In this document: positions 46,741 to 64,000 of the stretch, one piece after another
Layout of the letters: every line of letters begins with the position of its first letter
Numbering within the stretch: position 1 is the first letter of the stretch
Notes under the pieces: model-generated
Database searches by the model: none
The model's input: only the letters and a program-made list of their open reading frames with translations
Told to the model about the DNA's origin: nothing
Assembly (NCBI GenBank): GCA_051294905.1
Contig: CM119383.1
Location: 6,076,001-6,140,000 of the forward strand
Length of the DNA: 64,000 bases
From: Botryllus schlosseri
Taxonomy: Eukaryota
Reading direction: 5' to 3'
Made by a program: the position numbers and the translations under genes

Positions 46741-47654
46741 GGTCTCGTTTTTAAAATGAATACGTAAATAAACAGTCCAAATCCGTACTCAATTAACCTT
46801 GAACGTTAACTATGCTGCTCCGAGATTAACTCCGATGTGCTTATACTGCAACAAGATTTCTGTCTTTGAAAATTCCCTCTGACCTTCACTTTATGTGGCA
46901 ACTGGTATTATCGAGACTACTTTTTAGAACGGTAACTCTATCACATGCCGACGTCCTCCTCACATTCAACACCAACGTGCTAATTGGTCGTTGTTTGGAC
47001 CACTTCCTATCTACCGGCGTTTTGATTGCCACCAACTTTTTCATTGTTCTGTTGACAATGCAGCGCTCCCTTTCTCGCTACGAGAGTCTAAATTTGACAA
47101 TTACAGCTGCGGGAAGCTGACAGATTCATGAGTGATTAATCCGTGACTGTCATCATTCGGCAGGAAGTGCCCGTCATCTCTCGCTGTCTTTCGATTCGAT
47201 GATTGTGTCAGTGGGCTGGTATGACTTCATCTTACACGTGGCTGGTATCGGACTGGTCTCGTCTCTGCTTATCTCATGTAGCGTGCTCGGTGTCCTGTGC
47301 ATTGATTTCGGTGATTAGCTTCAAGGAAGCACGATTAGAATGTGTTTCCTGTAGAAGTATGTACAAGTAAACGTGCGGCATTGTTTGTCTTCCGATATAC
47401 TGTTTTCCTGCTAGTGCTATTTCTGTGACACGCTCCCTTGTTTACCGCGCTGCTCAATACTAAAAACAACGATCTAGGAGATTTTCTCACGGAGTATTGG
47501 ACAAAACGAATTGTCATCCACTGTCGAGCAGAGAGAGAAAATTCTTTTATTCGTCAACCATGAAATATAGTGTAGGCAATGTCCACAAACATTCATGTCC
47601 AATAGTATACATTTTTTAAATAACGCGAAACAATAACTTCATATTGTTAATTTA

Positions 47655-47694
47655 TTCGCTAAAAGCTTTTCGACTAACTCTCATCAGTAGCGAA
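47655..47694 (-). ncRNA. Minimal type I hammerhead ribozyme (family A)
   Basis: Reverse complement of the 58221-58260 motif. Confidence 0.85.
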
Positions 47695-47867
47695 CGTTAG
47701 TGATGGGGTGAATCAAATTCGAAATGTAAGAACTATTTTGTCTGTATGACGTAATAATAACAAAAACAAACAACTAGTAGACGGGCTAGATACGGTAGTA
47801 ACGGTACAAAACAAACGTTAACGAGTACATATTCGGTTATAAATAACCGAAAACACAACACATAACA

Positions 47868-50420
47868 TTAATGAAATATTCCAAGAGTGTAGAGGCGTTC
47901 CTTCTGGCGACAGAGAATCGGCTTTCGTAGCTTTATGATCGTAGATTCCAGGACCTTTAAATGAAACAGAGAACGGCCACGAGCAAGTATAGAAAATTGA
48001 CTGTCATTGTAATGATCAGCACATTCTGGATGGGATAAGAGATGCTGTCCAATAGCCGAATTACAAGCAGTAACTTGATCATAATCACGCAGTGTGTCAA
48101 CAGACTGCGATGAAGGAGTTGGAGAAACAATATTTATTCTAATTTGCCGTGGGACATGCTGGCGAATTCTTTGCTGCAAGCGCTGAGACGTGCGACCTAC
48201 ATACCGACTGTCACATCGGCACGTGTATTCATATATTATGTTGCTTTGATTTGTCGCAGGTAGCACATCCTTTTGCGTTGCAGGCATCAGAGATTTCGTC
48301 ATGAAGATTATCTGAGGTTCTACTTGTGAAAAACAATGGCTCACTGACGATTTAATTTGTTTTTCAAACCTGTTGGACACTTTCCCAATCCAAGGAAGAT
48401 GCAAATAAACAGGACATTTTCTAGGTCCAAACGGTTTAACTTTTCTGAAATCTTTGAGTTTACGATCTATGGTCATTTTAATGATATGATCAGGATAACC
48501 ATTTGACTGAAAGATTGACCGAATGTTCTCCAATTCAGAATCAAGTTTGACTTTACTACAAATCATCAGAGCCCTGTGTACCAGAGTTCTTATCAAATTT
48601 ACTTTACGTTTTACTGGACAGAAAGAATCCCACGAAATGTATTGCCCACTGAATGTAGGCTTACGGTAAACTGATGTAACAAAATTAGCACCCGTCTTTT
48701 CCACTACAACATCAAGGAATGCTAATGAATTATTGACCTCTTTTTCCATGGTGAATTTCAGTGATGGGTGAAGACCATTCAATTTGCTCAGAAACAAATC
48801 ACACTGGGATTCATTTTCAAATATGGCGAAGGTGTCATCAACATATCTTTGATACATTAATGGTCGATCAATATCTTCGAATAACCGTTTTTCGTAATAC
48901 CCCACAAAAATGTTAGCCAGAATGGGACCAAGCGGCGATCCCATTGCAACACCATCGATCTGTGTATATATGGTGTTATTGAAACTAAATTCGACATCAC
49001 AAGTGATCAATCGCATTAATTTAACAAAAGAAGACCTTGAGAATGGAGGAGATGGAAGGACACCACCATAGAGTTCATTGGCACAAATCTCTATAGTCTC
49101 TTGAACTGGCACGTTCGTGAATAAACTAGATATATCAAACGAACACATAGAGATTTCGGACTCATCGAGATCAACATTACGAATGGTATCAGCAAATGTG
49201 AACGAGTCACGAATGCAGTTACCACCATAGAACAAACTCACCGGCTCAAGATATCTCGCAATCCACTTCGCGACTTTGTGATACGCTGATCCAACCATCG
49301 ATAGTATCGGACGTAAGGGTACATTCGATTTATGGGTCTTCGGAAGACCATACATACGTGGTCGAATGGAGCCAGTGGGTCTGATGTCGTCGTATTCAGC
49401 AGAAGAGATTTTTCCCGCCTTCTTGAGGGTCAATAGTAGACGCTGAATACGAGCTTCTATCTTGGAGGTGTTGTCATTGTCACACGCAGGGCCAAGGATT
49501 TCGAATTTAGACTTGTCGCCAAGAATTAAATCCATTTTAGAAATGTAGTCACACTTATTCAAAATGACTACACCAGATCCTTTATCAGGTTTGGTTATGT
49601 GAATTGACTTATTGGATTTCAGGGATCTGATGCTCCTGTAGCAATCGGAAGTCATCGTGAAATCACTTCTGTCGATTGGAGTTCCACAAAAACCATGCGC
49701 TAAGCTACTTAGTTTGGCTTTAAGGGCCACAATTTTCTCACTGTGTTCCTTTGCTCTGCTTTCATCATCAAATTTCTGGTGATGATGTGACAATTGTCCA
49801 AGTAATACCTCAAATTCAGCAAAGACTTCCTCACGCTTGATTTCTGTCGGTGGCACAGAAAAATCCAGACCAAGAGATAGTACCAACTCTTCTGTGTCAC
49901 TCAGCTCATAGTCCGATAAGTTGGTAATAACCTTACTACCAGCAACTGCCTTGGTACCGTATCGTGTCTTGAGAAGCAAGCTGATGTTACGCTCATTCTG
50001 CCGTACCTTCTCATCCTCTTTACGTGCATCAATTTTGGCCATATAACGACAAAACCGTATCAGGTCAAAATAAGATAGAAACTGCACTGCCTGCTGCTTA
50101 AGCTTGGCACAACGTTGAGTTACGGTACTCATCTCTTTTACGCTGTTCTCGATCTCATCATGTAAAAATGCACTCTCAATCCTGGAGTTGATGCGAGCAC
50201 GCGATTTCTCTATCCTCGTCTTCAGAAACTTTGGTACAACTCTTTTCTTTATACAAGCCTTAAGAAAGGCTACATGATACCGTAGATTTCGAATTTTCCC
50301 CCGAGTTCTGACCAACTTATTCAGGATCTCCAATTGTTGGTCACTGTACCGTTTGCGAAAGTATTTAAACAAGTGATTTGTGGTACAGAACTTCAGAATA
50401 ACGCGAAACAATAACTTCAT
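47868..50420 (-). CDS. PLE reverse transcriptase + GIY-YIG endonuclease, full length 850 aa
   Basis: RT motifs YGLPKTHK, SFDISSLFTNVP, QIDGVAMGSPLGPILANIFV, YVDD, AFLDV; GIY-YIG NIIYEYTCRCDSRYVGRTSQRLQQRIRQH..HL..E. Confidence 0.97.
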   Translation of the reverse strand: MKLLFRVILKFCTTNHLFKYFRKRYSDQQLEILNKLVRTRGKIRNLRYHVAFLKACIKKRVVPKFLKTRIEKSRARINSRIESAFLHDEIENSVKEMSTVTQRCAKLKQQAVQFLSYFDLIRFCRYMAKIDARKEDEKVRQNERNISLLLKTRYGTKAVAGSKVITNLSDYELSDTEELVLSLGLDFSVPPTEIKREEVFAEFEVLLGQLSHHHQKFDDESRAKEHSEKIVALKAKLSSLAHGFCGTPIDRSDFTMTSDCYRSIRSLKSNKSIHITKPDKGSGVVILNKCDYISKMDLILGDKSKFEILGPACDNDNTSKIEARIQRLLLTLKKAGKISSAEYDDIRPTGSIRPRMYGLPKTHKSNVPLRPILSMVGSAYHKVAKWIARYLEPVSLFYGGNCIRDSFTFADTIRNVDLDESEISMCSFDISSLFTNVPVQETIEICANELYGGVLPSPPFSRSSFVKLMRLITCDVEFSFNNTIYTQIDGVAMGSPLGPILANIFVGYYEKRLFEDIDRPLMYQRYVDDTFAIFENESQCDLFLSKLNGLHPSLKFTMEKEVNNSLAFLDVVVEKTGANFVTSVYRKPTFSGQYISWDSFCPVKRKVNLIRTLVHRALMICSKVKLDSELENIRSIFQSNGYPDHIIKMTIDRKLKDFRKVKPFGPRKCPVYLHLPWIGKVSNRFEKQIKSSVSHCFSQVEPQIIFMTKSLMPATQKDVLPATNQSNIIYEYTCRCDSRYVGRTSQRLQQRIRQHVPRQIRINIVSPTPSSQSVDTLRDYDQVTACNSAIGQHLLSHPECADHYNDSQFSILARGRSLFHLKVLESTIIKLRKPILCRQKERLYTLGIFH

Positions 50421-50432
50421 ATTGTTAATTTA

Positions 50433-50472
50433 TTCGCTAAAAGCTTTTCGACTAACTCTCATCAGTAGCGAA
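50433..50472 (-). ncRNA. Minimal type I hammerhead ribozyme (family A)
   Basis: Same motif, one unit (2778 bp) away. Confidence 0.85.
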
Positions 50473-50645
50473 CGTTAGTGATGGGGTGAATCAAATTCGA
50501 AATGTAAGAACTATTTTGTCTGTATGACGTAATAATAACAAAAACAAACAACTAGTAGACGGGCTAGATACGGTAGTAACGGTACAAAACAAACGTTAAC
50601 GAGTACATATTCGGTTATAAATAACCGAAAACACAACACATAACA

Positions 50646-53198
50646 TTAATGAAATATTCCAAGAGTGTAGAGGCGTTCCTTCTGGCGACAGAGAATCGGC
50701 TTTCGTAGCTTTATGATCGTAGATTCCAGGACCTTTAAATGAAACAGAGAACGGCCACGAGCAAGTATAGAAAATTGACTGTCATTGTAATGATCAGCAC
50801 ATTCTGGATGGGATAAGAGATGCTGTCCAATAGCCGAATTACAAGCAGTAACTTGATCATAATCACGCAGTGTGTCAACAGACTGCGATGAAGGAGTTGG
50901 AGAAACAATATTTATTCTAATTTGCCGTGGGACATGCTGGCGAATTCTTTGCTGCAAGCGCTGAGACGTGCGACCTACATACCGACTGTCACATCGGCAC
51001 GTGTATTCATATATTATGTTGCTTTGATTTGTCGCAGGTAGCACATCCTTTTGCGTTGCAGGCATCAGAGATTTCGTCATGAAGATTATCTGAGGTTCTA
51101 CTTGTGAAAAACAATGGCTCACTGACGATTTAATTTGTTTTTCAAACCTGTTGGACACTTTCCCAATCCAAGGAAGATGCAAATAAACAGGACATTTTCT
51201 AGGTCCAAACGGTTTAACTTTTCTGAAATCTTTGAGTTTACGATCTATGGTCATTTTAATGATATGATCAGGATAACCATTTGACTGAAAGATTGACCGA
51301 ATGTTCTCCAATTCAGAATCAAGTTTGACTTTACTACAAATCATCAGAGCCCTGTGTACCAGAGTTCTTATCAAATTTACTTTACGTTTTACTGGACAGA
51401 AAGAATCCCACGAAATGTATTGCCCACTGAATGTAGGCTTACGGTAAACTGATGTAACAAAATTAGCACCCGTCTTTTCCACTACAACATCAAGGAATGC
51501 TAATGAATTATTGACCTCTTTTTCCATGGTGAATTTCAGTGATGGGTGAAGACCATTCAATTTGCTCAGAAACAAATCACACTGGGATTCATTTTCAAAT
51601 ATGGCGAAGGTGTCATCAACATATCTTTGATACATTAATGGTCGATCAATATCTTCGAATAACCGTTTTTCGTAATACCCCACAAAAATGTTAGCCAGAA
51701 TGGGACCAAGCGGCGATCCCATTGCAACACCATCGATCTGTGTATATATGGTGTTATTGAAACTAAATTCGACATCACAAGTGATCAATCGCATTAATTT
51801 AACAAAAGAAGACCTTGAGAATGGAGGAGATGGAAGGACACCACCATAGAGTTCATTGGCACAAATCTCTATAGTCTCTTGAACTGGCACGTTCGTGAAT
51901 AAACTAGATATATCAAACGAACACATAGAGATTTCGGACTCATCGAGATCAACATTACGAATGGTATCAGCAAATGTGAACGAGTCACGAATGCAGTTAC
52001 CACCATAGAACAAACTCACCGGCTCAAGATATCTCGCAATCCACTTCGCGACTTTGTGATACGCTGATCCAACCATCGATAGTATCGGACGTAAGGGTAC
52101 ATTCGATTTATGGGTCTTCGGAAGACCATACATACGTGGTCGAATGGAGCCAGTGGGTCTGATGTCGTCGTATTCAGCAGAAGAGATTTTTCCCGCCTTC
52201 TTGAGGGTCAATAGTAGACGCTGAATACGAGCTTCTATCTTGGAGGTGTTGTCATTGTCACACGCAGGGCCAAGGATTTCGAATTTAGACTTGTCGCCAA
52301 GAATTAAATCCATTTTAGAAATGTAGTCACACTTATTCAAAATGACTACACCAGATCCTTTATCAGGTTTGGTTATGTGAATTGACTTATTGGATTTCAG
52401 GGATCTGATGCTCCTGTAGCAATCGGAAGTCATCGTGAAATCACTTCTGTCGATTGGAGTTCCACAAAAACCATGCGCTAAGCTACTTAGTTTGGCTTTA
52501 AGGGCCACAATTTTCTCACTGTGTTCCTTTGCTCTGCTTTCATCATCAAATTTCTGGTGATGATGTGACAATTGTCCAAGTAATACCTCAAATTCAGCAA
52601 AGACTTCCTCACGCTTGATTTCTGTCGGTGGCACAGAAAAATCCAGACCAAGAGATAGTACCAACTCTTCTGTGTCACTCAGCTCATAGTCCGATAAGTT
52701 GGTAATAACCTTACTACCAGCAACTGCCTTGGTACCGTATCGTGTCTTGAGAAGCAAGCTGATGTTACGCTCATTCTGCCGTACCTTCTCATCCTCTTTA
52801 CGTGCATCAATTTTGGCCATATAACGACAAAACCGTATCAGGTCAAAATAAGATAGAAACTGCACTGCCTGCTGCTTAAGCTTGGCACAACGTTGAGTTA
52901 CGGTACTCATCTCTTTTACGCTGTTCTCGATCTCATCATGTAAAAATGCACTCTCAATCCTGGAGTTGATGCGAGCACGCGATTTCTCTATCCTCGTCTT
53001 CAGAAACTTTGGTACAACTCTTTTCTTTATACAAGCCTTAAGAAAGGCTACATGATACCGTAGATTTCGAATTTTCCCCCGAGTTCTGACCAACTTATTC
53101 AGGATCTCCAATTGTTGGTCACTGTACCGTTTGCGAAAGTATTTAAACAAGTGATTTGTGGTACAGAACTTCAGAATAACGCGAAACAATAACTTCAT
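50646..53198 (-). CDS. PLE RT + GIY-YIG, full length 850 aa
   Basis: Same translation as 47868-50420. Confidence 0.97.
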   Translation of the reverse strand: MKLLFRVILKFCTTNHLFKYFRKRYSDQQLEILNKLVRTRGKIRNLRYHVAFLKACIKKRVVPKFLKTRIEKSRARINSRIESAFLHDEIENSVKEMSTVTQRCAKLKQQAVQFLSYFDLIRFCRYMAKIDARKEDEKVRQNERNISLLLKTRYGTKAVAGSKVITNLSDYELSDTEELVLSLGLDFSVPPTEIKREEVFAEFEVLLGQLSHHHQKFDDESRAKEHSEKIVALKAKLSSLAHGFCGTPIDRSDFTMTSDCYRSIRSLKSNKSIHITKPDKGSGVVILNKCDYISKMDLILGDKSKFEILGPACDNDNTSKIEARIQRLLLTLKKAGKISSAEYDDIRPTGSIRPRMYGLPKTHKSNVPLRPILSMVGSAYHKVAKWIARYLEPVSLFYGGNCIRDSFTFADTIRNVDLDESEISMCSFDISSLFTNVPVQETIEICANELYGGVLPSPPFSRSSFVKLMRLITCDVEFSFNNTIYTQIDGVAMGSPLGPILANIFVGYYEKRLFEDIDRPLMYQRYVDDTFAIFENESQCDLFLSKLNGLHPSLKFTMEKEVNNSLAFLDVVVEKTGANFVTSVYRKPTFSGQYISWDSFCPVKRKVNLIRTLVHRALMICSKVKLDSELENIRSIFQSNGYPDHIIKMTIDRKLKDFRKVKPFGPRKCPVYLHLPWIGKVSNRFEKQIKSSVSHCFSQVEPQIIFMTKSLMPATQKDVLPATNQSNIIYEYTCRCDSRYVGRTSQRLQQRIRQHVPRQIRINIVSPTPSSQSVDTLRDYDQVTACNSAIGQHLLSHPECADHYNDSQFSILARGRSLFHLKVLESTIIKLRKPILCRQKERLYTLGIFH

Positions 53199-53210
53199 AT
53201 TGTTAATTTA

Positions 53211-53250
53211 TTCGCTAAAAGCTTTTCGACTAACTCTCATCAGTAGCGAA
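53211..53250 (-). ncRNA. Minimal type I hammerhead ribozyme (family A)
   Basis: Same motif, two units away. Confidence 0.85.
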
Positions 53251-53423
53251 CGTTAGTGATGGGGTGAATCAAATTCGAAATGTAAGAACTATTTTGTCTG
53301 TATGACGTAATAATAACAAAAACAAACAACTAGTAGACGGGCTAGATACGGTAGTAACGGTACAAAACAAACGTTAACGAGTACATATTCGGTTATAAAT
53401 AACCGAAAACACAACACATAACA

Positions 53424-55688: not shown

Positions 55689-55782
55689 CTCTTTTACGCT
55701 GTTCTCGATCTCATCATGTAAAAATGACTCCAGGATTGAGAGTGCATTTTTACATGATGAGATCGAGAACAGCGTAAAAGAG

Positions 55783-58047
55783 ATGAGTACCGTAACTCAA
55801 CGTTGTGCCAAGCTTAAGCAGCAGGCAGTGCAGTTTCTATCTTATTTTGACCTGATACGGTTTTGTCGTTATATGGCCAAAATTGATGCACGTAAAGAGG
55901 ATGAGAAGGTACGGCAGAATGAGCGTAACATCAGCTTGCTTCTCAAGACACGATACGGTACCAAGGCAGTTGCTGGTAGTAAGGTTATTACCAACTTATC
56001 GGACTATGAGCTGAGTGACACAGAAGAGTTGGTACTATCTCTTGGTCTGGATTTTTCTGTGCCACCGACAGAAATCAAGCGTGAGGAAGTCTTTGCTGAA
56101 TTTGAGGTATTACTTGGACAATTGTCACATCATCACCAGAAATTTGATGATGAAAGCAGAGCAAAGGAACACAGTGAGAAAATTGTGGCCCTTAAAGCCA
56201 AACTAAGTAGCTTAGCGCATGGTTTTTGTGGAACTCCAATCGACAGAAGTGATTTCACGATGACTTCCGATTGCTACAGGAGCATCAGATCCCTGAAATC
56301 CAATAAGTCAATTCACATAACCAAACCTGATAAAGGATCTGGTGTAGTCATTTTGAATAAGTGTGACTACATTTCTAAAATGGATTTAATTCTTGGCGAC
56401 AAGTCTAAATTCGAAATCCTTGGCCCTGCGTGTGACAATGACAACACCTCCAAGATAGAAGCTCGTATTCAGCGTCTACTATTGACCCTCAAGAAGGCGG
56501 GAAAAATCTCTTCTGCTGAATACGACGACATCAGACCCACTGGCTCCATTCGACCACGTATGTATGGTCTTCCGAAGACCCATAAATCGAATGTACCCTT
56601 ACGTCCGATACTATCGATGGTTGGATCAGCGTATCACAAAGTCGCGAAGTGGATTGCGAGATATCTTGAGCCGGTGAGTTTGTTCTATGGTGGTAACTGC
56701 ATTCGTGACTCGTTCACATTTGCTGATACCATTCGTAATGTTGATCTCGATGAGTCCGAAATCTCTATGTGTTCGTTTGATATATCTAGTTTATTCACGA
56801 ACGTGCCAGTTCAAGAGACTATAGAGATTTGTGCCAATGAACTCTATGGTGGTGTCCTTCCATCTCCTCCATTCTCAAGGTCTTCTTTTGTTAAATTAAT
56901 GCGATTGATCACTTGTGATGTCGAATTTAGTTTCAATAACACCATATATACACAGATCGATGGTGTTGCAATGGGATCGCCGCTTGGTCCCATTCTGGCT
57001 AACATTTTTGTGGGGTATTACGAAAAACGGTTATTCGAAGATATTGATCGACCATTAATGTATCAAAGATATGTTGATGACACCTTCGCCATATTTGAAA
57101 ATGAATCCCAGTGTGATTTGTTTCTGAGCAAATTGAATGGTCTTCACCCATCACTGAAATTCACCATGGAAAAAGAGGTCAATAATTCATTAGCATTCCT
57201 TGATGTTGTAGTGGAAAAGACGGGTGCTAATTTTGTTACATCAGTTTACCGTAAGCCTACATTCAGTGGGCAATACATTTCGTGGGATTCTTTCTGTCCA
57301 GTAAAACGTAAAGTAAATTTGATAAGAACTCTGGTACACAGGGCTCTGATGATTTGTAGTAAAGTCAAACTTGATTCTGAATTGGAGAACATTCGGTCAA
57401 TCTTTCAGTCAAATGGTTATCCTGATCATATCATTAAAATGACCATAGATCGTAAACTCAAAGATTTCAGAAAAGTTAAACCGTTTGGACCTAGAAAATG
57501 TCCTGTTTATTTGCATCTTCCTTGGATTGGGAAAGTGTCCAACAGGTTTGAAAAACAAATTAAATCGTCAGTGAGCCATTGTTTTTCACAAGTAGAACCT
57601 CAGATAATCTTCATGACGAAATCTCTGATGCCTGCAACGCAAAAGGATGTGCTACCTGCGACAAATCAAAGCAACATAATATATGAATACACGTGCCGAT
57701 GTGACAGTCGGTATGTAGGTCGCACGTCTCAGCGCTTGCAGCAAAGAATTCGCCAGCATGTCCCACGGCAAATTAGAATAAATATTGTTTCTCCAACTCC
57801 TTCATCGCAGTCTGTTGACACACTGCGTGATTATGATCAAGTTACTGCTTGTAATTCGGCTATTGGACAGCATCTCTTATCCCATCCAGAATGTGCTGAT
57901 CATTACAATGACAGTCAATTTTCTATACTTGCTCGTGGCCGTTCTCTGTTTCATTTAAAGGTCCTGGAATCTACGATCATAAAGCTACGAAAGCCGATTC
58001 TCTGTCGCCAGAAGGAACGCCTCTACACTCTTGGAATATTTCATTAA
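55783..58047 (+). CDS. PLE RT + GIY-YIG, 5'-truncated copy (754 aa from internal Met97)
   Basis: Homology begins at 55727; catalytic motifs intact. Confidence 0.85.
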   Translation: MSTVTQRCAKLKQQAVQFLSYFDLIRFCRYMAKIDARKEDEKVRQNERNISLLLKTRYGTKAVAGSKVITNLSDYELSDTEELVLSLGLDFSVPPTEIKREEVFAEFEVLLGQLSHHHQKFDDESRAKEHSEKIVALKAKLSSLAHGFCGTPIDRSDFTMTSDCYRSIRSLKSNKSIHITKPDKGSGVVILNKCDYISKMDLILGDKSKFEILGPACDNDNTSKIEARIQRLLLTLKKAGKISSAEYDDIRPTGSIRPRMYGLPKTHKSNVPLRPILSMVGSAYHKVAKWIARYLEPVSLFYGGNCIRDSFTFADTIRNVDLDESEISMCSFDISSLFTNVPVQETIEICANELYGGVLPSPPFSRSSFVKLMRLITCDVEFSFNNTIYTQIDGVAMGSPLGPILANIFVGYYEKRLFEDIDRPLMYQRYVDDTFAIFENESQCDLFLSKLNGLHPSLKFTMEKEVNNSLAFLDVVVEKTGANFVTSVYRKPTFSGQYISWDSFCPVKRKVNLIRTLVHRALMICSKVKLDSELENIRSIFQSNGYPDHIIKMTIDRKLKDFRKVKPFGPRKCPVYLHLPWIGKVSNRFEKQIKSSVSHCFSQVEPQIIFMTKSLMPATQKDVLPATNQSNIIYEYTCRCDSRYVGRTSQRLQQRIRQHVPRQIRINIVSPTPSSQSVDTLRDYDQVTACNSAIGQHLLSHPECADHYNDSQFSILARGRSLFHLKVLESTIIKLRKPILCRQKERLYTLGIFH

Positions 58048-58220
58048 TGTTATGTGTTGTGTTTTCGGTTATTTATAACCGAATATGTACTCGTTAACGT
58101 TTGTTTTGTACCGTTACTACCGTATCTAGCCCGTCTACTAGTTGTTTGTTTTTGTTATTATTACGTCATACAGACAAAATAGTTCTTACATTTCGAATTT
58201 GATTCACCCCATCACTAACG

Positions 58221-58260
58221 TTCGCTACTGATGAGAGTTAGTCGAAAAGCTTTTAGCGAA
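58221..58260 (+). ncRNA. Minimal type I hammerhead ribozyme (family A)
   Basis: UUCGCUA-CUGAUGA-GA(GUUAG)UC-GAAA-AGCUU-U-UAGCGAA: 7-bp stem I, 2-bp stem II, palindromic stem III AAGCUU, predicted cleavage after 58253; ATG at 58273. Confidence 0.88.
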
Positions 58261-58272
58261 TAAATTAACAAT

Positions 58273-60825
58273 ATGAAGTTATTGTTTCGCGTTATTCTGA
58301 AGTTCTGTACCACAAATCACTTGTTTAAATACTTTCGCAAACGGTACAGTGACCAACAATTGGAGATCCTGAATAAGTTGGTCAGAACTCGGGGGAAAAT
58401 TCGAAATCTACGGTATCATGTAGCCTTTCTTAAGGCTTGTATAAAGAAAAGAGTTGTACCAAAGTTTCTGAAGACGAGGATAGAGAAATCGCGTGCTCGC
58501 ATCAACTCCAGGATTGAGAGTGCATTTTTACATGATGAGATCGAGAACAGCGTAAAAGAGATGAGTACCGTAACTCAACGTTGTGCCAAGCTTAAGCAGC
58601 AGGCAGTGCAGTTTCTATCTTATTTTGACCTGATACGGTTTTGTCGTTATATGGCCAAAATTGATGCACGTAAAGAGGATGAGAAGGTACGGCAGAATGA
58701 GCGTAACATCAGCTTGCTTCTCAAGACACGATACGGTACCAAGGCAGTTGCTGGTAGTAAGGTTATTACCAACTTATCGGACTATGAGCTGAGTGACACA
58801 GAAGAGTTGGTACTATCTCTTGGTCTGGATTTTTCTGTGCCACCGACAGAAATCAAGCGTGAGGAAGTCTTTGCTGAATTTGAGGTATTACTTGGACAAT
58901 TGTCACATCATCACCAGAAATTTGATGATGAAAGCAGAGCAAAGGAACACAGTGAGAAAATTGTGGCCCTTAAAGCCAAACTAAGTAGCTTAGCGCATGG
59001 TTTTTGTGGAACTCCAATCGACAGAAGTGATTTCACGATGACTTCCGATTGCTACAGGAGCATCAGATCCCTGAAATCCAATAAGTCAATTCACATAACC
59101 AAACCTGATAAAGGATCTGGTGTAGTCATTTTGAATAAGTGTGACTACATTTCTAAAATGGATTTAATTCTTGGCGACAAGTCTAAATTCGAAATCCTTG
59201 GCCCTGCGTGTGACAATGACAACACCTCCAAGATAGAAGCTCGTATTCAGCGTCTACTATTGACCCTCAAGAAGGCGGGAAAAATCTCTTCTGCTGAATA
59301 CGACGACATCAGACCCACTGGCTCCATTCGACCACGTATGTATGGTCTTCCGAAGACCCATAAATCGAATGTACCCTTACGTCCGATACTATCGATGGTT
59401 GGATCAGCGTATCACAAAGTCGCGAAGTGGATTGCGAGATATCTTGAGCCGGTGAGTTTGTTCTATGGTGGTAACTGCATTCGTGACTCGTTCACATTTG
59501 CTGATACCATTCGTAATGTTGATCTCGATGAGTCCGAAATCTCTATGTGTTCGTTTGATATATCTAGTTTATTCACGAACGTGCCAGTTCAAGAGACTAT
59601 AGAGATTTGTGCCAATGAACTCTATGGTGGTGTCCTTCCATCTCCTCCATTCTCAAGGTCTTCTTTTGTTAAATTAATGCGATTGATCACTTGTGATGTC
59701 GAATTTAGTTTCAATAACACCATATATACACAGATCGATGGTGTTGCAATGGGATCGCCGCTTGGTCCCATTCTGGCTAACATTTTTGTGGGGTATTACG
59801 AAAAACGGTTATTCGAAGATATTGATCGACCATTAATGTATCAAAGATATGTTGATGACACCTTCGCCATATTTGAAAATGAATCCCAGTGTGATTTGTT
59901 TCTGAGCAAATTGAATGGTCTTCACCCATCACTGAAATTCACCATGGAAAAAGAGGTCAATAATTCATTAGCATTCCTTGATGTTGTAGTGGAAAAGACG
60001 GGTGCTAATTTTGTTACATCAGTTTACCGTAAGCCTACATTCAGTGGGCAATACATTTCGTGGGATTCTTTCTGTCCAGTAAAACGTAAAGTAAATTTGA
60101 TAAGAACTCTGGTACACAGGGCTCTGATGATTTGTAGTAAAGTCAAACTTGATTCTGAATTGGAGAACATTCGGTCAATCTTTCAGTCAAATGGTTATCC
60201 TGATCATATCATTAAAATGACCATAGATCGTAAACTCAAAGATTTCAGAAAAGTTAAACCGTTTGGACCTAGAAAATGTCCTGTTTATTTGCATCTTCCT
60301 TGGATTGGGAAAGTGTCCAACAGGTTTGAAAAACAAATTAAATCGTCAGTGAGCCATTGTTTTTCACAAGTAGAACCTCAGATAATCTTCATGACGAAAT
60401 CTCTGATGCCTGCAACGCAAAAGGATGTGCTACCTGCGACAAATCAAAGCAACATAATATATGAATACACGTGCCGATGTGACAGTCGGTATGTAGGTCG
60501 CACGTCTCAGCGCTTGCAGCAAAGAATTCGCCAGCATGTCCCACGGCAAATTAGAATAAATATTGTTTCTCCAACTCCTTCATCGCAGTCTGTTGACACA
60601 CTGCGTGATTATGATCAAGTTACTGCTTGTAATTCGGCTATTGGACAGCATCTCTTATCCCATCCAGAATGTGCTGATCATTACAATGACAGTCAATTTT
60701 CTATACTTGCTCGTGGCCGTTCTCTGTTTCATTTAAAGGTCCTGGAATCTACGATCATAAAGCTACGAAAGCCGATTCTCTGTCGCCAGAAGGAACGCCT
60801 CTACACTCTTGGAATATTTCATTAA
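58273..60825 (+). CDS. PLE RT + GIY-YIG, full length 850 aa
   Basis: Same translation as the minus-arm copies. Confidence 0.97.
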   Translation: MKLLFRVILKFCTTNHLFKYFRKRYSDQQLEILNKLVRTRGKIRNLRYHVAFLKACIKKRVVPKFLKTRIEKSRARINSRIESAFLHDEIENSVKEMSTVTQRCAKLKQQAVQFLSYFDLIRFCRYMAKIDARKEDEKVRQNERNISLLLKTRYGTKAVAGSKVITNLSDYELSDTEELVLSLGLDFSVPPTEIKREEVFAEFEVLLGQLSHHHQKFDDESRAKEHSEKIVALKAKLSSLAHGFCGTPIDRSDFTMTSDCYRSIRSLKSNKSIHITKPDKGSGVVILNKCDYISKMDLILGDKSKFEILGPACDNDNTSKIEARIQRLLLTLKKAGKISSAEYDDIRPTGSIRPRMYGLPKTHKSNVPLRPILSMVGSAYHKVAKWIARYLEPVSLFYGGNCIRDSFTFADTIRNVDLDESEISMCSFDISSLFTNVPVQETIEICANELYGGVLPSPPFSRSSFVKLMRLITCDVEFSFNNTIYTQIDGVAMGSPLGPILANIFVGYYEKRLFEDIDRPLMYQRYVDDTFAIFENESQCDLFLSKLNGLHPSLKFTMEKEVNNSLAFLDVVVEKTGANFVTSVYRKPTFSGQYISWDSFCPVKRKVNLIRTLVHRALMICSKVKLDSELENIRSIFQSNGYPDHIIKMTIDRKLKDFRKVKPFGPRKCPVYLHLPWIGKVSNRFEKQIKSSVSHCFSQVEPQIIFMTKSLMPATQKDVLPATNQSNIIYEYTCRCDSRYVGRTSQRLQQRIRQHVPRQIRINIVSPTPSSQSVDTLRDYDQVTACNSAIGQHLLSHPECADHYNDSQFSILARGRSLFHLKVLESTIIKLRKPILCRQKERLYTLGIFH

Positions 60826-60998
60826 TGTTATGTGTTGTGTTTTCGGTTATTTATAACCGAATATGTACTCGTTAACGTTTGTTTTGTACCGTTACTACCG
60901 TATCTAGCCCGTCTACTAGTTGTTTGTTTTTGTTATTATTACGTCATACAGACAAAATAGTTCTTACATTTCGAATTTGATTCACCCCATCACTAACG

Positions 60999-61038
60999 TT
61001 CGCTACTGATGAGAGTTAGTCGAAAAGCTTTTAGCGAA
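60999..61038 (+). ncRNA. Minimal type I hammerhead ribozyme (family A)
   Basis: Identical motif; ATG at 61051. Confidence 0.85.
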
Positions 61039-61050
61039 TAAATTAACAAT

Positions 61051-63603
61051 ATGAAGTTATTGTTTCGCGTTATTCTGAAGTTCTGTACCACAAATCACTT
61101 GTTTAAATACTTTCGCAAACGGTACAGTGACCAACAATTGGAGATCCTGAATAAGTTGGTCAGAACTCGGGGGAAAATTCGAAATCTACGGTATCATGTA
61201 GCCTTTCTTAAGGCTTGTATAAAGAAAAGAGTTGTACCAAAGTTTCTGAAGACGAGGATAGAGAAATCGCGTGCTCGCATCAACTCCAGGATTGAGAGTG
61301 CATTTTTACATGATGAGATCGAGAACAGCGTAAAAGAGATGAGTACCGTAACTCAACGTTGTGCCAAGCTTAAGCAGCAGGCAGTGCAGTTTCTATCTTA
61401 TTTTGACCTGATACGGTTTTGTCGTTATATGGCCAAAATTGATGCACGTAAAGAGGATGAGAAGGTACGGCAGAATGAGCGTAACATCAGCTTGCTTCTC
61501 AAGACACGATACGGTACCAAGGCAGTTGCTGGTAGTAAGGTTATTACCAACTTATCGGACTATGAGCTGAGTGACACAGAAGAGTTGGTACTATCTCTTG
61601 GTCTGGATTTTTCTGTGCCACCGACAGAAATCAAGCGTGAGGAAGTCTTTGCTGAATTTGAGGTATTACTTGGACAATTGTCACATCATCACCAGAAATT
61701 TGATGATGAAAGCAGAGCAAAGGAACACAGTGAGAAAATTGTGGCCCTTAAAGCCAAACTAAGTAGCTTAGCGCATGGTTTTTGTGGAACTCCAATCGAC
61801 AGAAGTGATTTCACGATGACTTCCGATTGCTACAGGAGCATCAGATCCCTGAAATCCAATAAGTCAATTCACATAACCAAACCTGATAAAGGATCTGGTG
61901 TAGTCATTTTGAATAAGTGTGACTACATTTCTAAAATGGATTTAATTCTTGGCGACAAGTCTAAATTCGAAATCCTTGGCCCTGCGTGTGACAATGACAA
62001 CACCTCCAAGATAGAAGCTCGTATTCAGCGTCTACTATTGACCCTCAAGAAGGCGGGAAAAATCTCTTCTGCTGAATACGACGACATCAGACCCACTGGC
62101 TCCATTCGACCACGTATGCATGGTCTTCCGAAGACCCATAAATCGAATGTACCCTTACGTCCGATACTATCGATGGTTGGATCAGCGTATCACAAAGTCG
62201 CGAAGTGGATTGCGAGATATCTTGAGCCGGTGAGTTTGTTCTATGGTGGTAACTGCATTCGTGACTCGTTCACATTTGCTGATACCATTCGTAATGTTGA
62301 TCTCGATGAGTCCGAAATCTCTATGTGTTCGTTTGATATATCTAGTTTATTCACGAACGTGCCAGTTCAAGAGACTATAGAGATTTGTGCCAATGAACTC
62401 TATGGTGGTGTCCTTCCATCTCCTCCATTCTCAAGGTCTTCTTTTGTTAAATTAATGCGATTGATCACTTGTGATGTCGAATTTAGTTTCAATAACACCA
62501 TATATACACAGATCGATGGTGTTGCAATGGGATCGCCGCTTGGTCCCATTCTGGCTAACATTTTTGTGGGGTATTACGAAAAACGGTTATTCGAAGATAT
62601 TGATCGACCATTAATGTATCAAAGATATGTTGATGACACCTTCGCCATATTTGAAAATGAATCCCAGTGTGATTTGTTTCTGAGCAAATTGAATGGTCTT
62701 CACCCATCACTGAAATTCACCATGGAAAAAGAGGTCAATAATTCATTAGCATTCCTTGATGTTGTAGTGGAAAAGACGGGTGCTAATTTTGTTACATCAG
62801 TTTACCGTAAGCCTACATTCAGTGGGCAATACATTTCGTGGGATTCTTTCTGTCCAGTAAAACGTAAAGTAAATTTGATAAGAACTCTGGTACACAGGGC
62901 TCTGATGATTTGTAGTAAAGTCAAACTTGATTCTGAATTGGAGAACATTCGGTCAATCTTTCAGTCAAATGGTTATCCTGATCATATCATTAAAATGACC
63001 ATAGATCGTAAACTCAAAGATTTCAGAAAAGTTAAACCGTTTGGACCTAGAAAATGTCCTGTTTATTTGCATCTTCCTTGGATTGGGAAAGTGTCCAACA
63101 GGTTTGAAAAACAAATTAAATCGTCAGTGAGCCATTGTTTTTCACAAGTAGAACCTCAGATAATCTTCATGACGAAATCTCTGATGCCTGCAACGCAAAA
63201 GGATGTGCTACCTGCGACAAATCAAAGCAACATAATATATGAATACACGTGCCGATGTGACAGTCGGTATGTAGGTCGCACGTCTCAGCGCTTGCAGCAA
63301 AGAATTCGCCAGCATGTCCCACGGCAAATTAGAATAAATATTGTTTCTCCAACTCCTTCATCGCAGTCTGTTGACACACTGCGTGATTATGATCAAGTTA
63401 CTGCTTGTAATTCGGCTATTGGACAGCATCTCTTATCCCATCCAGAATGTGCTGATCATTACAATGACAGTCAATTTTCTATACTTGCTCGTGGCCGTTC
63501 TCTGTTTCATTTAAAGGTCCTGGAATCTACGATCATAAAGCTACGAAAGCCGATTCTCTGTCGCCAGAAGGAACGCCTCTACACTCTTGGAATATTTCAT
63601 TAA
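61051..63603 (+). CDS. PLE RT + GIY-YIG, full length 850 aa, with YGLPK>HGLPK substitution
   Basis: T>C at 62119 (TAT>CAT); otherwise the same translation. Confidence 0.95.
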   Translation: MKLLFRVILKFCTTNHLFKYFRKRYSDQQLEILNKLVRTRGKIRNLRYHVAFLKACIKKRVVPKFLKTRIEKSRARINSRIESAFLHDEIENSVKEMSTVTQRCAKLKQQAVQFLSYFDLIRFCRYMAKIDARKEDEKVRQNERNISLLLKTRYGTKAVAGSKVITNLSDYELSDTEELVLSLGLDFSVPPTEIKREEVFAEFEVLLGQLSHHHQKFDDESRAKEHSEKIVALKAKLSSLAHGFCGTPIDRSDFTMTSDCYRSIRSLKSNKSIHITKPDKGSGVVILNKCDYISKMDLILGDKSKFEILGPACDNDNTSKIEARIQRLLLTLKKAGKISSAEYDDIRPTGSIRPRMHGLPKTHKSNVPLRPILSMVGSAYHKVAKWIARYLEPVSLFYGGNCIRDSFTFADTIRNVDLDESEISMCSFDISSLFTNVPVQETIEICANELYGGVLPSPPFSRSSFVKLMRLITCDVEFSFNNTIYTQIDGVAMGSPLGPILANIFVGYYEKRLFEDIDRPLMYQRYVDDTFAIFENESQCDLFLSKLNGLHPSLKFTMEKEVNNSLAFLDVVVEKTGANFVTSVYRKPTFSGQYISWDSFCPVKRKVNLIRTLVHRALMICSKVKLDSELENIRSIFQSNGYPDHIIKMTIDRKLKDFRKVKPFGPRKCPVYLHLPWIGKVSNRFEKQIKSSVSHCFSQVEPQIIFMTKSLMPATQKDVLPATNQSNIIYEYTCRCDSRYVGRTSQRLQQRIRQHVPRQIRINIVSPTPSSQSVDTLRDYDQVTACNSAIGQHLLSHPECADHYNDSQFSILARGRSLFHLKVLESTIIKLRKPILCRQKERLYTLGIFH

Positions 63604-63776
63604 TGTTATGTGTTGTGTTTTCGGTTATTTATAACCGAATATGTACTCGTTAACGTTTGTTTTGTACCGTTACTACCGTATCTAGCCCGTCTACTAGTTG
63701 TTTGTTTTTGTTATTATTACGTCATACAGACAAAATAGTTCTTACATTTCGAATTTGATTCACCCCATCACTAACG

Positions 63777-63816
63777 TTCGCTACTGATGAGAGTTAGTCG
63801 AAAAGCTTTTAGCGAA
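63777..63816 (+). ncRNA. Minimal type I hammerhead ribozyme (family A)
   Basis: Identical motif in the terminal partial unit; ATG at 63829, and the element stops at 63878. Confidence 0.85.
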
Positions 63817-64000
63817 TAAATTAACAATATGAAGTTATTGTTTCGCGTTATTCTGAAGTTCTGTACCACAAATCACTTATTTTTTAAATATTATCCCAAC
63901 TATATTTTACACGGTTTATACTGGGAGACCCGATATGACCGGAGTCTTCTAGGCCGGAGTCACCCAAGCATATTGGCAGTATTAATGATAATATGAATCA

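What the first reader, a model, noticed from the sequence alone, without database searches (positions are those of the whole stretch)
47611..63890. A 16.2-kb self-palindromic Penelope-like concatemer bounded by one 12-bp target-site duplication
Seen: two arms of about 8.1 kb, each about 2.9 tandem 2778-bp units, head-to-head around an 18-nt spacer, with both 3' ends facing outward. The flanks are unrelated except for ATTTTTTAAATA directly at both junctions (47611-47622, 63879-63890). Known: PLEs form partial tandems (pseudo-LTRs), often carry inverted 5'-truncated segments, and need an upstream copy to transcribe a full ORF. Inference: the whole structure occupies a single integration site and holds four full ORFs, each with an upstream copy, so it could act as a bidirectional master element. 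An inversion that mirrors a multi-unit concatemer almost base for base is far larger than the inverted PLE segments I know of.
Basis: partly seen in the sequence, partly recalled or inferred. Interest (0 to 1): 0.9.

Follow-up and report, generated by a model that had tools for sequence, protein, structure and literature searches.

The report
Giant mirror-image Penelope retrotransposon insertion
A single, very recent insertion of a Penelope-like retrotransposon left two mirror-image 8.1-kb arms of tandem copies at one target site; the architecture is the known Penelope pattern, and this is the largest symmetric example in a genome that holds at least two other arrays of similar size.

Summary
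Window 47619-55726 (minus sense) and 55727-63878 (plus sense) are head-to-head arms of a 2778-bp unit, about 2.9 units each. Only one base differs among all six units (62119). The "18-nt spacer" is not foreign: it is unit positions 233-250 of the right arm.

The 12-bp ATTTTTTAAATA duplication is a true target-site duplication. Both flanks are halves of one high-copy host repeat, and in at least six paralogous copies that I worked through the halves are contiguous with the 12-mer once.

The unit encodes an 850-aa RT plus GIY-YIG protein and carries a minimal hammerhead core. It shows the Penelope hallmarks: partial tandems, an inverted copy, and a ~30-nt tail on one arm only.

The structure is not unique. 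This young family (about 100 units, intact ORFs) has at least 21 other head-to-head insertions, including arrays of about 16.8 kb and 15.3 kb. The window is the only large one with equal arms. In-phase junctions are modestly enriched (4 of 21, P about 0.02).

Best model: both cleaved target strands primed reverse transcription at the two adjacent start sites, and both cDNAs ran to the same template end. Fold-back self-priming is not excluded.

Unit number per arm was not verified with reads.

The parts
47530..47622 (+). Left half of the host interspersed repeat that was the target; its last 12 nt are the left TSD copy.
   Evidence: query positions 51-143 match at least 39 other places at 93-99% identity; single-copy flank contigs of four runs stop at 47559-47569, after which depth jumps.
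47611..47622 (.). Left copy of the 12-bp target-site duplication ATTTTTTAAATA.
   Evidence: Paralogous empty sites hold it once.
47619..55726 (-). Left arm, 8108 nt. It comprises a terminal stub (unit 1-24, no tail), two full units (47643-50420, 50421-53198) and an inner unit truncated at unit position 251 (53199-55726).
47868..50420 (-). Intact 850-aa RT/GIY-YIG ORF (outer left unit).
   Evidence: sequence identical to the ORF tested.
50646..53198 (-). Intact 850-aa ORF (second left unit).
53424..55688 (-). 5'-truncated ORF of the inner left unit (754 aa from the first internal ATG).
55726..55727 (.). Head-to-head junction: left arm at unit 251 abuts right arm at unit 233. There is a 4-nt inverted microhomology (unit 233-236 ACTC against the reverse complement of 246-249) with a 1-nt slip.
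   Evidence: The 158-nt junction query matches in full only here in the genome.
55727..55744 (+). It is unit positions 233-250 of the right arm and forms the unpaired loop of the palindrome.
   Evidence: the 2778-bp periodicity of the right arm extends left to 55727.
55727..63878 (+). Right arm, 8152 nt. It comprises an inner unit truncated at 233 (55727-58272), two full units (58273-61050, 61051-63828) and a terminal stub with tail (unit 1-50, 63829-63878).
55783..58047 (+). 5'-truncated ORF of the inner right unit.
58273..60825 (+). Intact 850-aa ORF: RVT_1 at 367-548, GIY-YIG-like at 728-756, DKG and YVDD motifs.
61051..63603 (+). Intact 850-aa ORF (outer right unit); it carries the only private substitution, at 62119.
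60977..61036 (+). Minimal hammerhead-like motif in the 225-nt non-coding part of each unit. It has a CTGATGAG...GAAA core, a helix I of TTCGCTA with TAGCGAA, and a palindromic AAGCTT at helix III. The same motif lies at 58199-58258 and 63755-63814 (+) and mirrored at 47657-47716, 50435-50494 and 53213-53272 (-).
   Evidence: RAGATH-1 hammerhead, 20 bits, E 0.51, far below the gathering score. The core is read directly.
62119..62119 (+). The only difference among the six units (C here, T in the other five and in 12 other loci; Tyr to His).
63879..63890 (.). Right copy of the 12-bp TSD.
63879..64000 (+). Right half of the host repeat (it continues beyond the window).
   Evidence: 39 other places at 90-95% identity, several directly abutting the left-half matches.

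Best explanation
This is one very recent retrotransposition event of an active, canonical (C-terminal endonuclease) Penelope-like element.

The element's protein cut both strands of an AT-rich site inside a host repeat, 12 bp apart. Each freed 3' end primed reverse transcription inside the start of the ORF: one at the proximal start site (unit position about 20-24, no tail) and the other at the distal site (about 50-54, giving the ~30-nt tail). Both cDNAs copied a multi-unit RNA of one and the same sequence variant for about 2.9 units. They stopped within 18 nt of each other, most simply because they reached the same 5' end. They were then joined head to head through a 4-nt microhomology.

Shown here: the anatomy, the TSD, the single site, the family rules and the youth of the insertion. 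Inferred: two-strand priming, a shared template end and the joining step.
For: Identity:
- RVT_1 at E 7e-10, GIY-YIG-like segment, DKG and YVDD motifs.
- 614 homologues, some carrying PF01541.
- Hammerhead core.

Single event:
- The 12-mer lies at both ends.
- In paralogous host-repeat copies the two flank halves are contiguous with the 12-mer once. Examples: C10:11278808-11279011, C8:869832-870034, C12:16149035-16149237, C7:20925699-20925901.
- Eight other loci have 10-13-bp AT-rich TSDs.

Family rules met:
- In 6 of 6 other canonical head-to-head loci one arm ends at unit 50-57 and the other at 16-30.
- Single-arm loci split 3:3, so P is about 0.016 if the arms chose their ends independently.

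Same template:
- Arms and units within a locus differ by 0-3 nt, against 0-35 nt between loci.

Symmetry as a class:
- 4 of 21 other head-to-head loci are in phase within 70 nt, where 5% is expected (binomial P about 0.02).
- In the two in-phase loci with unequal arms (C2:4.93M, C3:3.48M) the arm that holds the loop is the shorter one. A copy made by simple fold-back cannot do that. Initiation in different units of one multi-unit RNA can.

Biochemistry from the literature: a purified PLE protein cleaves and extends both strands, and starts RT at two adjacent internal sites that delimit the tail (PMC11167929).
Against: - No read-level check of the number of units per arm was possible.
- The two sampled 31-mers that cross the centre were in no indexed run, not even the probable source sample. 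This is weak evidence, because such a path is likely removed from cleaned contigs.
- About 80% of head-to-head loci are out of phase. With 22 loci, one near-symmetric case could be chance (roughly 0.1 by my estimate).
- The centre has exactly the form expected of a snap-back hairpin (4-bp stem, short loop).
- An RNA 5' end at unit 233-251 is not a recurrent 5' end in the family.
- Whether the template was a linear multi-unit RNA or a repeatedly copied single unit is unknown.
Confidence: 0.55

Rival explanations
1. Fold-back (snap-back) self-priming. Only one target strand primed reverse transcription (the right, tail-bearing arm). At unit 233 the 3' end of the cDNA folded back on itself through the ACTC/GAGT microhomology and copied its own 8.1 kb outward. 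The copy was then joined to the other side of the target about 30 nt short of the template's end.
For: - The centre is a perfect hairpin geometry: the loop belongs to the longer (right) arm, and there is a 4-nt inverted microhomology.
- The copy arm is shorter than its template by 30 nt.
- Arms are identical except for one base.
- Small equal-arm palindromes recur: window 9588-9824, C14:11.95M and C3:4.00M.
- Self-priming has been proposed for PLE inverted junctions (PMC3846280).
Against: - The left arm ends exactly at the second canonical RT start site, which single-arm insertions also use (units 19-21 in C6:7.66M, C1 and C10:4.02M). Fold-back does not predict this without an extra endonuclease step.
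- In the in-phase loci C2:4.93M and C3:3.48M the supposed copy is 1 and 2 units longer than its template.
- No inverted duplication of flanking DNA is seen.
Confidence: 0.25
2. Assembly artefact. The head-to-head insertion is real, but the number of units per arm, and hence the symmetry, or the centre itself, was produced by the assembler or by fold-back chimeric reads.
For: - All units are identical, so only reads longer than 8.2 kb can fix the unit number.
- None of the indexed runs held the two sampled centre-spanning words.
- Short-read contigs stop about 50 nt before the junction because of the host repeat.
Against: - A fold-back chimera would mirror the flanks as well. Here the flanks differ, carry a family-typical 12-bp TSD and are contiguous in paralogues.
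- The outer ends obey the tail/no-tail rule.
- The same assembly resolved many asymmetric arrays with other unit numbers, so symmetry is not a systematic product.
- One arm carries a private base.
- Some inversion junction must exist to link a minus arm at the left flank to a plus arm at the right flank.
Confidence: 0.12
3. Coincidence, or later DNA-level events. Either two independent cDNAs (or two separate insertions) happened to end within 18 nt of each other, or a post-insertion inverted duplication followed by gene conversion made the arms equal.
For: - Most head-to-head loci (17 of 21) are out of phase, so arm ends are usually independent.
- With 22 loci, one near-equal pair is not very improbable.
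Against: - In-phase junctions are about four times enriched (P about 0.02).
- Equal unit number plus equal phase is rarer still.
- There is no internal TSD at the centre, so this is not a nested second insertion.
- The outer ends differ by the canonical tail, which an inverted duplication of DNA would not create.
Confidence: 0.08

Closest known systems
[quoted passage not shown]
   Same: A single ORF with RT and C-terminal GIY-YIG. Partial tandems. An adjacent inverted 5'-truncated copy. A 30-40-nt tail at one end only. A hammerhead motif in the non-coding part. Short AT-rich TSDs. Frequent 5' truncation.
   Different: Both arms are multi-unit (2.9 units each) and nearly equal, giving a 16.3-kb near-perfect palindrome. 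The textbook picture is a short inverted pLTR next to 1-2 direct units. Clade placement was not tested.
PAc (Poseidon of Anolis carolinensis) in vitro system, PMC11167929
   Same: Cleavage and extension of both target strands. RT initiation at two adjacent internal sites inside the ORF start that delimit the tail. AT-rich target. Multi-copy RNA proposed as template. An AC-rich sequence at the start site (here ACCACAAATCAC at unit 40-51).
   Different: The start sites here lie at about +20 and +52, not +111-118. In vitro, no difference between strands in site use was seen. Here the two arms of one insertion always use different sites.
Adineta vaga Penelope families with palindromes at inverted junctions, PMC3846280
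   Same: [quoted passage not shown] Self-priming was proposed from the junction palindromes.
   Different: Those junction palindromes are 18-38 bp. No multi-kilobase equal-arm case is described in the text I read.
L1 twin priming (5' inversion of LINE-1; recalled from my own knowledge, Ostertag and Kazazian 2001)
   Same: Both target strands prime cDNA synthesis, and the two cDNAs are joined by microhomology. One family locus (C6:16.42M, right arm ending at unit 2179) looks like this type.
   Different: In L1 the second primer anneals internally, so the inverted part is upstream sequence and not a second copy of the 3' end. No palindrome results.

Membership tests
Penelope-like element, canonical EN+ type | Reverse transcriptase domain with PLE-type motifs (DKG upstream of the RT core, YVDD) | tested here: met
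   RVT_1 at E 7e-10, 39.4 bits, above the cut-off. PDKGSG and YVDD are read in the translation.
Penelope-like element, canonical EN+ type | C-terminal GIY-YIG endonuclease | tested here: inconclusive
   Pfam GIY-YIG scores 16.9 bits, E 0.0078, below the 22.6 cut-off. The motif IIYEY...YVGRT...R...QH is visible. Homologues P0014 and P0080 carry PF01541.
Penelope-like element, canonical EN+ type | Partial tandem copies forming pseudo-LTRs | tested here: met
   A 2778-bp period in both arms. Tandems at many other loci.
Penelope-like element, canonical EN+ type | Adjacent inverted 5'-truncated copy (head-to-head) | tested here: met
   The window plus at least 21 other loci.
Penelope-like element, canonical EN+ type | A 30-40-nt tail present at only one end of the insertion | tested here: met
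   The right arm ends at unit 50-54 and the left at 20-24. The same holds in 6 of 6 other canonical head-to-head loci.
Penelope-like element, canonical EN+ type | Hammerhead ribozyme in the pLTR | tested here: inconclusive
   The core and helix I are visible. The only Rfam match is weak: RF03152, 20 bits, E 0.51. No hammerhead was found in the 9-kb scan. Cleavage was not tested.
Penelope-like element, canonical EN+ type | Short TSD at AT-rich targets and frequent 5' truncation | tested here: met
   TSDs of 10-13 bp at nine loci. Unit census rises from 37 (position 126) to about 100 (positions 1565, 2167).
Penelope-like element, canonical EN+ type | RT groups with PLE/telomerase RTs in a phylogeny; assignment to a named clade | not tested
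The only named homologue is 'reverse transcriptase [Chrysogorgia stellata]'.

The most novel reading that the evidence does not exclude
Symmetric and in-phase head-to-head insertions are the full run-off products of a coupled reaction. One dimeric PLE particle holds one multi-unit RNA. Each protomer uses one of the two adjacent start sites (hence a tail on exactly one arm) and one of the two cleaved target strands. Both cDNAs run to the same RNA 5' end. The 16.3-kb palindrome would then be an intact in vivo record of that reaction and a measure of its processivity (at least 8.1 kb twice).
Probability: 0.35. Interest if true: 0.6.

Novelty: new member of a known kind. Interest (0 to 1): 0.4.

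Why it matters
How PLEs integrate is still largely unknown, and their tandem/inverted structures are the main unexplained signature.

A young family gives clean constraints that older, decayed copies cannot give. Here the units are intact and the insertions nearly free of mutations, which allows several observations:
- a fixed 12-bp stagger;
- one-sided tails in every canonical head-to-head insertion examined;
- arms always of the same sequence variant;
- a minority class of in-phase or equal-arm products of up to 2 x 8.1 kb.

The locus is also a natural near-perfect 16-kb palindrome with an 18-nt loop. From general knowledge, such a structure is expected to be fragile in replication, and it could give hairpin RNA if transcribed through. 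It is therefore a candidate site of instability or of small-RNA production. None of this was tested here.

Tried and rejected
- Rfam scan of 55000-64000. It returned only microRNA-like hits, which are caused by the hairpin at the centre. I rejected them as artefacts of the palindrome.
- Search of public runs with the 60 nt that cross the centre. None was listed, but only two words were sampled, and cleaned contigs are expected to drop such a path. I do not count this as evidence of absence.
- Read laying on the left junction. All runs were contigs. They end at 47559-47569 because the host repeat starts there, so the junction could not be shown to be bridged. The contigs of X5 and X10 that run on past 47621 are only about 73% like the right flank, so they are paralogous and not the allelic empty site.
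- Looking for an allelic empty haplotig. The unique part of the left flank matches only itself.
The inner breakpoints of the later loci were therefore bracketed with exact 22-mers instead of being read directly.
- Host-repeat ends or terminal inverted repeats: none found in the sequence held.
- Nested double insertion: rejected, because there is no TSD at the centre.
- Simple fold-back as the general rule for in-phase loci: rejected for C2:4.93M and C3:3.48M, where the 'copy' is longer than its 'template'.
Full report
**1. What is in the sequence**

The repeat finder reports inverted arms 47619-55726 and 55745-63852, 8108 nt each. It also reports direct repeats with a 2778-nt spacing inside each arm.

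My own comparison refines this. I number the unit from the ATG at 58273.
- The right arm runs from unit 233 (55727), through two full units, to unit 50 (63878). It reaches 54 if one mismatch is allowed.
- The left arm, on the minus strand, runs from unit 251 (55726), through two full units, to unit 24 (47619).
They are element sequence and form the unpaired loop of the palindrome.
- At the junction there is a 4-nt inverted microhomology (unit 233-236 against 246-249) with a 1-nt slip.
- Among all six units only one base differs: C at 62119, where the other five units and 12 other loci have T. The change is Tyr to His.
- There are four 850-aa ORFs and two 5'-truncated ones.

**2. What the unit is**

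- The ORF matches RVT_1 (E 7e-10). It has a weak GIY-YIG hit near the C-terminus (E 0.0078, below the Pfam cut-off).
- The translation shows the DKG and YVDD motifs and an IIYEY...YVGRT...R...QH segment.
- A database search found 614 homologues at E <= 1e-10, two of which carry PF01541.
- The 225-nt non-coding part holds a CTGATGAG...GAAA core flanked by a 7-bp helix I and a palindromic AAGCTT. Rfam gives only a weak hammerhead match there (20 bits, E 0.51), and none in the wider scan.
- Together with the tandem and inverted arrangement, this is a canonical endonuclease-positive Penelope-like element. Clade placement was not tested.

**3. One insertion, one target site**

ATTTTTTAAATA lies at 47611-47622 and 63879-63890.

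The left flank from 47530 onward and the right flank are each high-copy: 39 further matches were listed for each, at 93-99% and 90-95% identity. In paralogous copies the two halves abut, and both 12-mers map onto the same 12 bases. I worked this through for six loci:
- C10:11278808-11278901 with 11278891-11279011
- C8:869832-869923 with 869913-870034
- C12:16149035-16149126 with 16149116-16149237
- C7:20925699-20925790 with 20925780-20925901
- C15:20878126-20878217 with 20878015-20878136
- C1:14335239-14335329 with 14335126-14335246, where the two mappings are off by one base

These are paralogous empty sites. They show that the flanks belong together and that the duplication arose on insertion.

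The family norm agrees. Eight other loci have 10-13-bp AT-rich TSDs, most often 12 bp. There is no TSD at the centre, so this is not one copy nested in another.

**4. The family in this genome**

The genome is 495 Mb in 219 contigs, and the window is C13:6076001-6140000.

- **Census.** Exact 22-mers placed along the unit count 37, 60, 63, 93, 101 and 98 units at positions 126, 642, 908, 1269, 1565 and 2167. This is the 5'-truncation gradient expected of target-primed elements.
- **ORFs.** All 13 full units that I could read have open ORFs. Their variable sites are 48 synonymous, 27 non-synonymous and 6 non-coding. The differences therefore arose in lineages under selection, not by decay.
- **Identity within and between loci.** Within a locus, arms and units differ by 0-3 nt. 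Between loci they differ by 0-35 nt per unit.
- **Closest copy.** The window's unit is identical to the full unit at C13:21735140-21737917. Its unit junctions are 100% identical to those of the C11:0.89M and C11:23.98M arrays.

**5. How unusual the window is**

Head-to-head insertions are common. Seven of the first 13 loci are of this type, and 14 more appear in the coordinate tables.

Large arrays also exist:
- C10:6.486-6.503M has one full minus unit and four full plus units plus partial units. It is about 16.8 kb, with a 2781-nt unit.
- C11:0.890-0.906M has three full minus and two full plus units, about 15.3 kb, and 100% identity over every segment and 22-mer tested.
- C11:23.979-23.990M is about 11.8 kb.

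So the window is not the only giant. It is the only large array with the same number of units in both arms.

**6. Rules that bear on mechanism**

(a) Tail.
- In every canonical head-to-head locus that I could read, one arm ends at unit 50-57 and the other at 16-30. The loci are C13:13.06M, C12:26.18M, C2:4.93M, C3:3.48M, C7:5.33M and C15:2.19M. The window follows the same rule (50-54 against 20-24).
- So does the 237-bp miniature of a sister family at window 9588-9824, which also has a 12-bp TSD.
- Single-arm insertions split 3 with tail to 3 without. If the arms chose their ends independently, six discordant pairs out of six has P about 0.016.
- The two end classes correspond to the two adjacent internal RT start sites shown in vitro for an Anolis PLE. 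That protein also cleaves and extends both target strands (PMC11167929).

(b) Same template.
- Both arms always carry the same sequence variant.

(c) Phase.
- I compared the inner breakpoints of the two arms in unit coordinates. Where I had no sequence, I bracketed them from the spacing of 22-mer hits and from which arm holds which 22-mer.
- Of 21 loci other than the window, four are in phase within 70 nt: C3:3.48M (25), C2:4.93M (67), C3:4.00M (at most 62) and C14:11.95M (at most 70).
- Chance expectation is 5%, giving a binomial P of about 0.02.
- C14:11.95M (about 3.1 kb) and C3:4.00M (about 2.2 kb) are equal-arm palindromes like the window.
- C2:4.93M (0.91 against 1.87 units) and C3:3.48M (0.29 against 2.28 units) are in phase but unequal. 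In both, the arm that contains the unpaired loop is the shorter one.

**7. Most likely mechanism**

The data fit a reaction in which both strands of the target are cut 12 bp apart and both 3' ends prime cDNA synthesis: one at the proximal and one at the distal start site.

Symmetry follows if both cDNAs run to the same 5' end of the template. In-phase arms with different unit numbers follow if the two initiations occur in different units of one multi-unit RNA. Out-of-phase arms, the majority, follow from early termination of one cDNA. The two cDNA ends are then joined by microhomology.

What I showed directly is the anatomy and the statistics. The two-strand priming rests on the published in vitro work and on the canonical ends of both arms. 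The shared template end and the coupling of the two start sites are my inference.

The main rival is snap-back of a single cDNA at unit 233. It fits the centre perfectly and has been proposed for PLEs (PMC3846280). It has two weaknesses. It does not by itself explain why the second arm ends exactly at the other canonical start site. It also cannot produce the two in-phase loci whose 'copy' is longer than its 'template'.

Whether the identical tandem units come from a linear multi-unit transcript or from repeated copying of one unit (template jumping, or a circular RNA as discussed for retrozymes in 10.64898/2026.07.22.740005) cannot be decided here.

**8. Is it an assembly artefact?**

The evidence here argues against one, but only indirectly.

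Against an artefact:
- The flanks differ and carry a correct TSD.
- The outer ends obey the tail rule.
- One arm has a private base.
- The same assembly holds many asymmetric arrays.
- The centre junction occurs in full only once in the genome.

Read evidence was not obtained:
- Twenty public runs from seven studies hold the left flank.
- The 60 nt across the centre gave only two sampled words, and no run was listed.
- The one read-laying run (left junction, four runs, all Logan contigs) showed single-copy flank contigs ending at 47559-47569. Depth then rises to thousands, as expected where the host repeat and then the element begin. No listed piece bridges the junction.
- A low-depth path that leaves and re-enters a repeat of more than 10,000x depth is likely to be cleaned away from such contigs, so this silence is weak evidence.
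- The number of units per arm therefore rests on the assembly alone.

**9. Age and consequences**

One difference in 16.3 kb, and none between most unit pairs, means a very recent event. Gene conversion between arms could also erase differences.

Presence in other individuals is unknown. The contigs of X5 and X10 that continue past 47621 are paralogues: they are about 73% like the right flank.

It is untested. From general knowledge, an equally plausible consequence is that read-through across the centre would give a long hairpin RNA, and that the palindrome is unstable.

**10. Verdict**

It is a new member of a known kind, not a new kind. Its value lies in the constraints that this young family puts on the Penelope integration mechanism.

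Noticed in passing
window 9588-9824: A 237-bp head-to-head mini-insertion of a sister PLE family. Its arms are 9638-9703 and 9752-9817 (97% complementary, 48 nt between them). It has a hammerhead-like core, a 12-bp TSD ATTTTCGGTAAT, and a tail on the left arm only. It follows the same rules as the giant, at 1/70 of its size.
   Followed up: partly
window 47530-47622 and 63879-64000 (continues in L031): The target is a high-copy interspersed repeat: about 200 first-look candidates, with copies 90-99% identical. Its ends and type were not determined, and no terminal inverted repeat was seen in the held sequence.
   Followed up: partly
L031:4731-5022 (C13:6144731-6145022): An older, diverged (84-92%) fragment of a related PLE lies about 5 kb to the right of the insertion. 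It again has a short inverted piece next to a direct pLTR end.
   Followed up: no
window 45035-46081: Contigs of two other individuals (runs X5, X10) skip 1045 nt of the left flank. This is an indel polymorphism, possibly another mobile-element insertion present in the assembled individual.
   Followed up: no
window 40843-42804 (-): A 653-aa open frame with a thrombospondin type 1 repeat (PF00090, E 2.5e-5). It is probably a large exon of a host gene, 4.8 kb to the left of the insertion.
   Followed up: no
L045 (Logan contig SRR29245597_152881, 2808 nt): The contig is one unit plus 30 nt, with identical first and last 30 nt. That is how a tandem repeat closes on itself in a k=31 graph. It differs from the window unit at 13 sites. 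By my reading of codon positions, 12 of these are synonymous.
   Followed up: partly
C6:16425194-16430041 (L038:3195-8042): A head-to-head locus whose plus arm covers unit 904-2179 and ends at a non-canonical internal position directly at the TSD (GTACAGTAGA). It looks like L1-type twin priming with internal annealing.
   Followed up: partly
C10:6485945-6502745 and C11:890450-905700 (coordinates inferred from match tables): Two further giant head-to-head arrays of the same family: about 16.8 kb with 1+4 full units, and about 15.3 kb with 3+2 full units. The second matched the window at 100% over every segment and 22-mer tested. Its minus arm is the only place seen with three or more same-strand units matching the window's variant.
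   Followed up: partly
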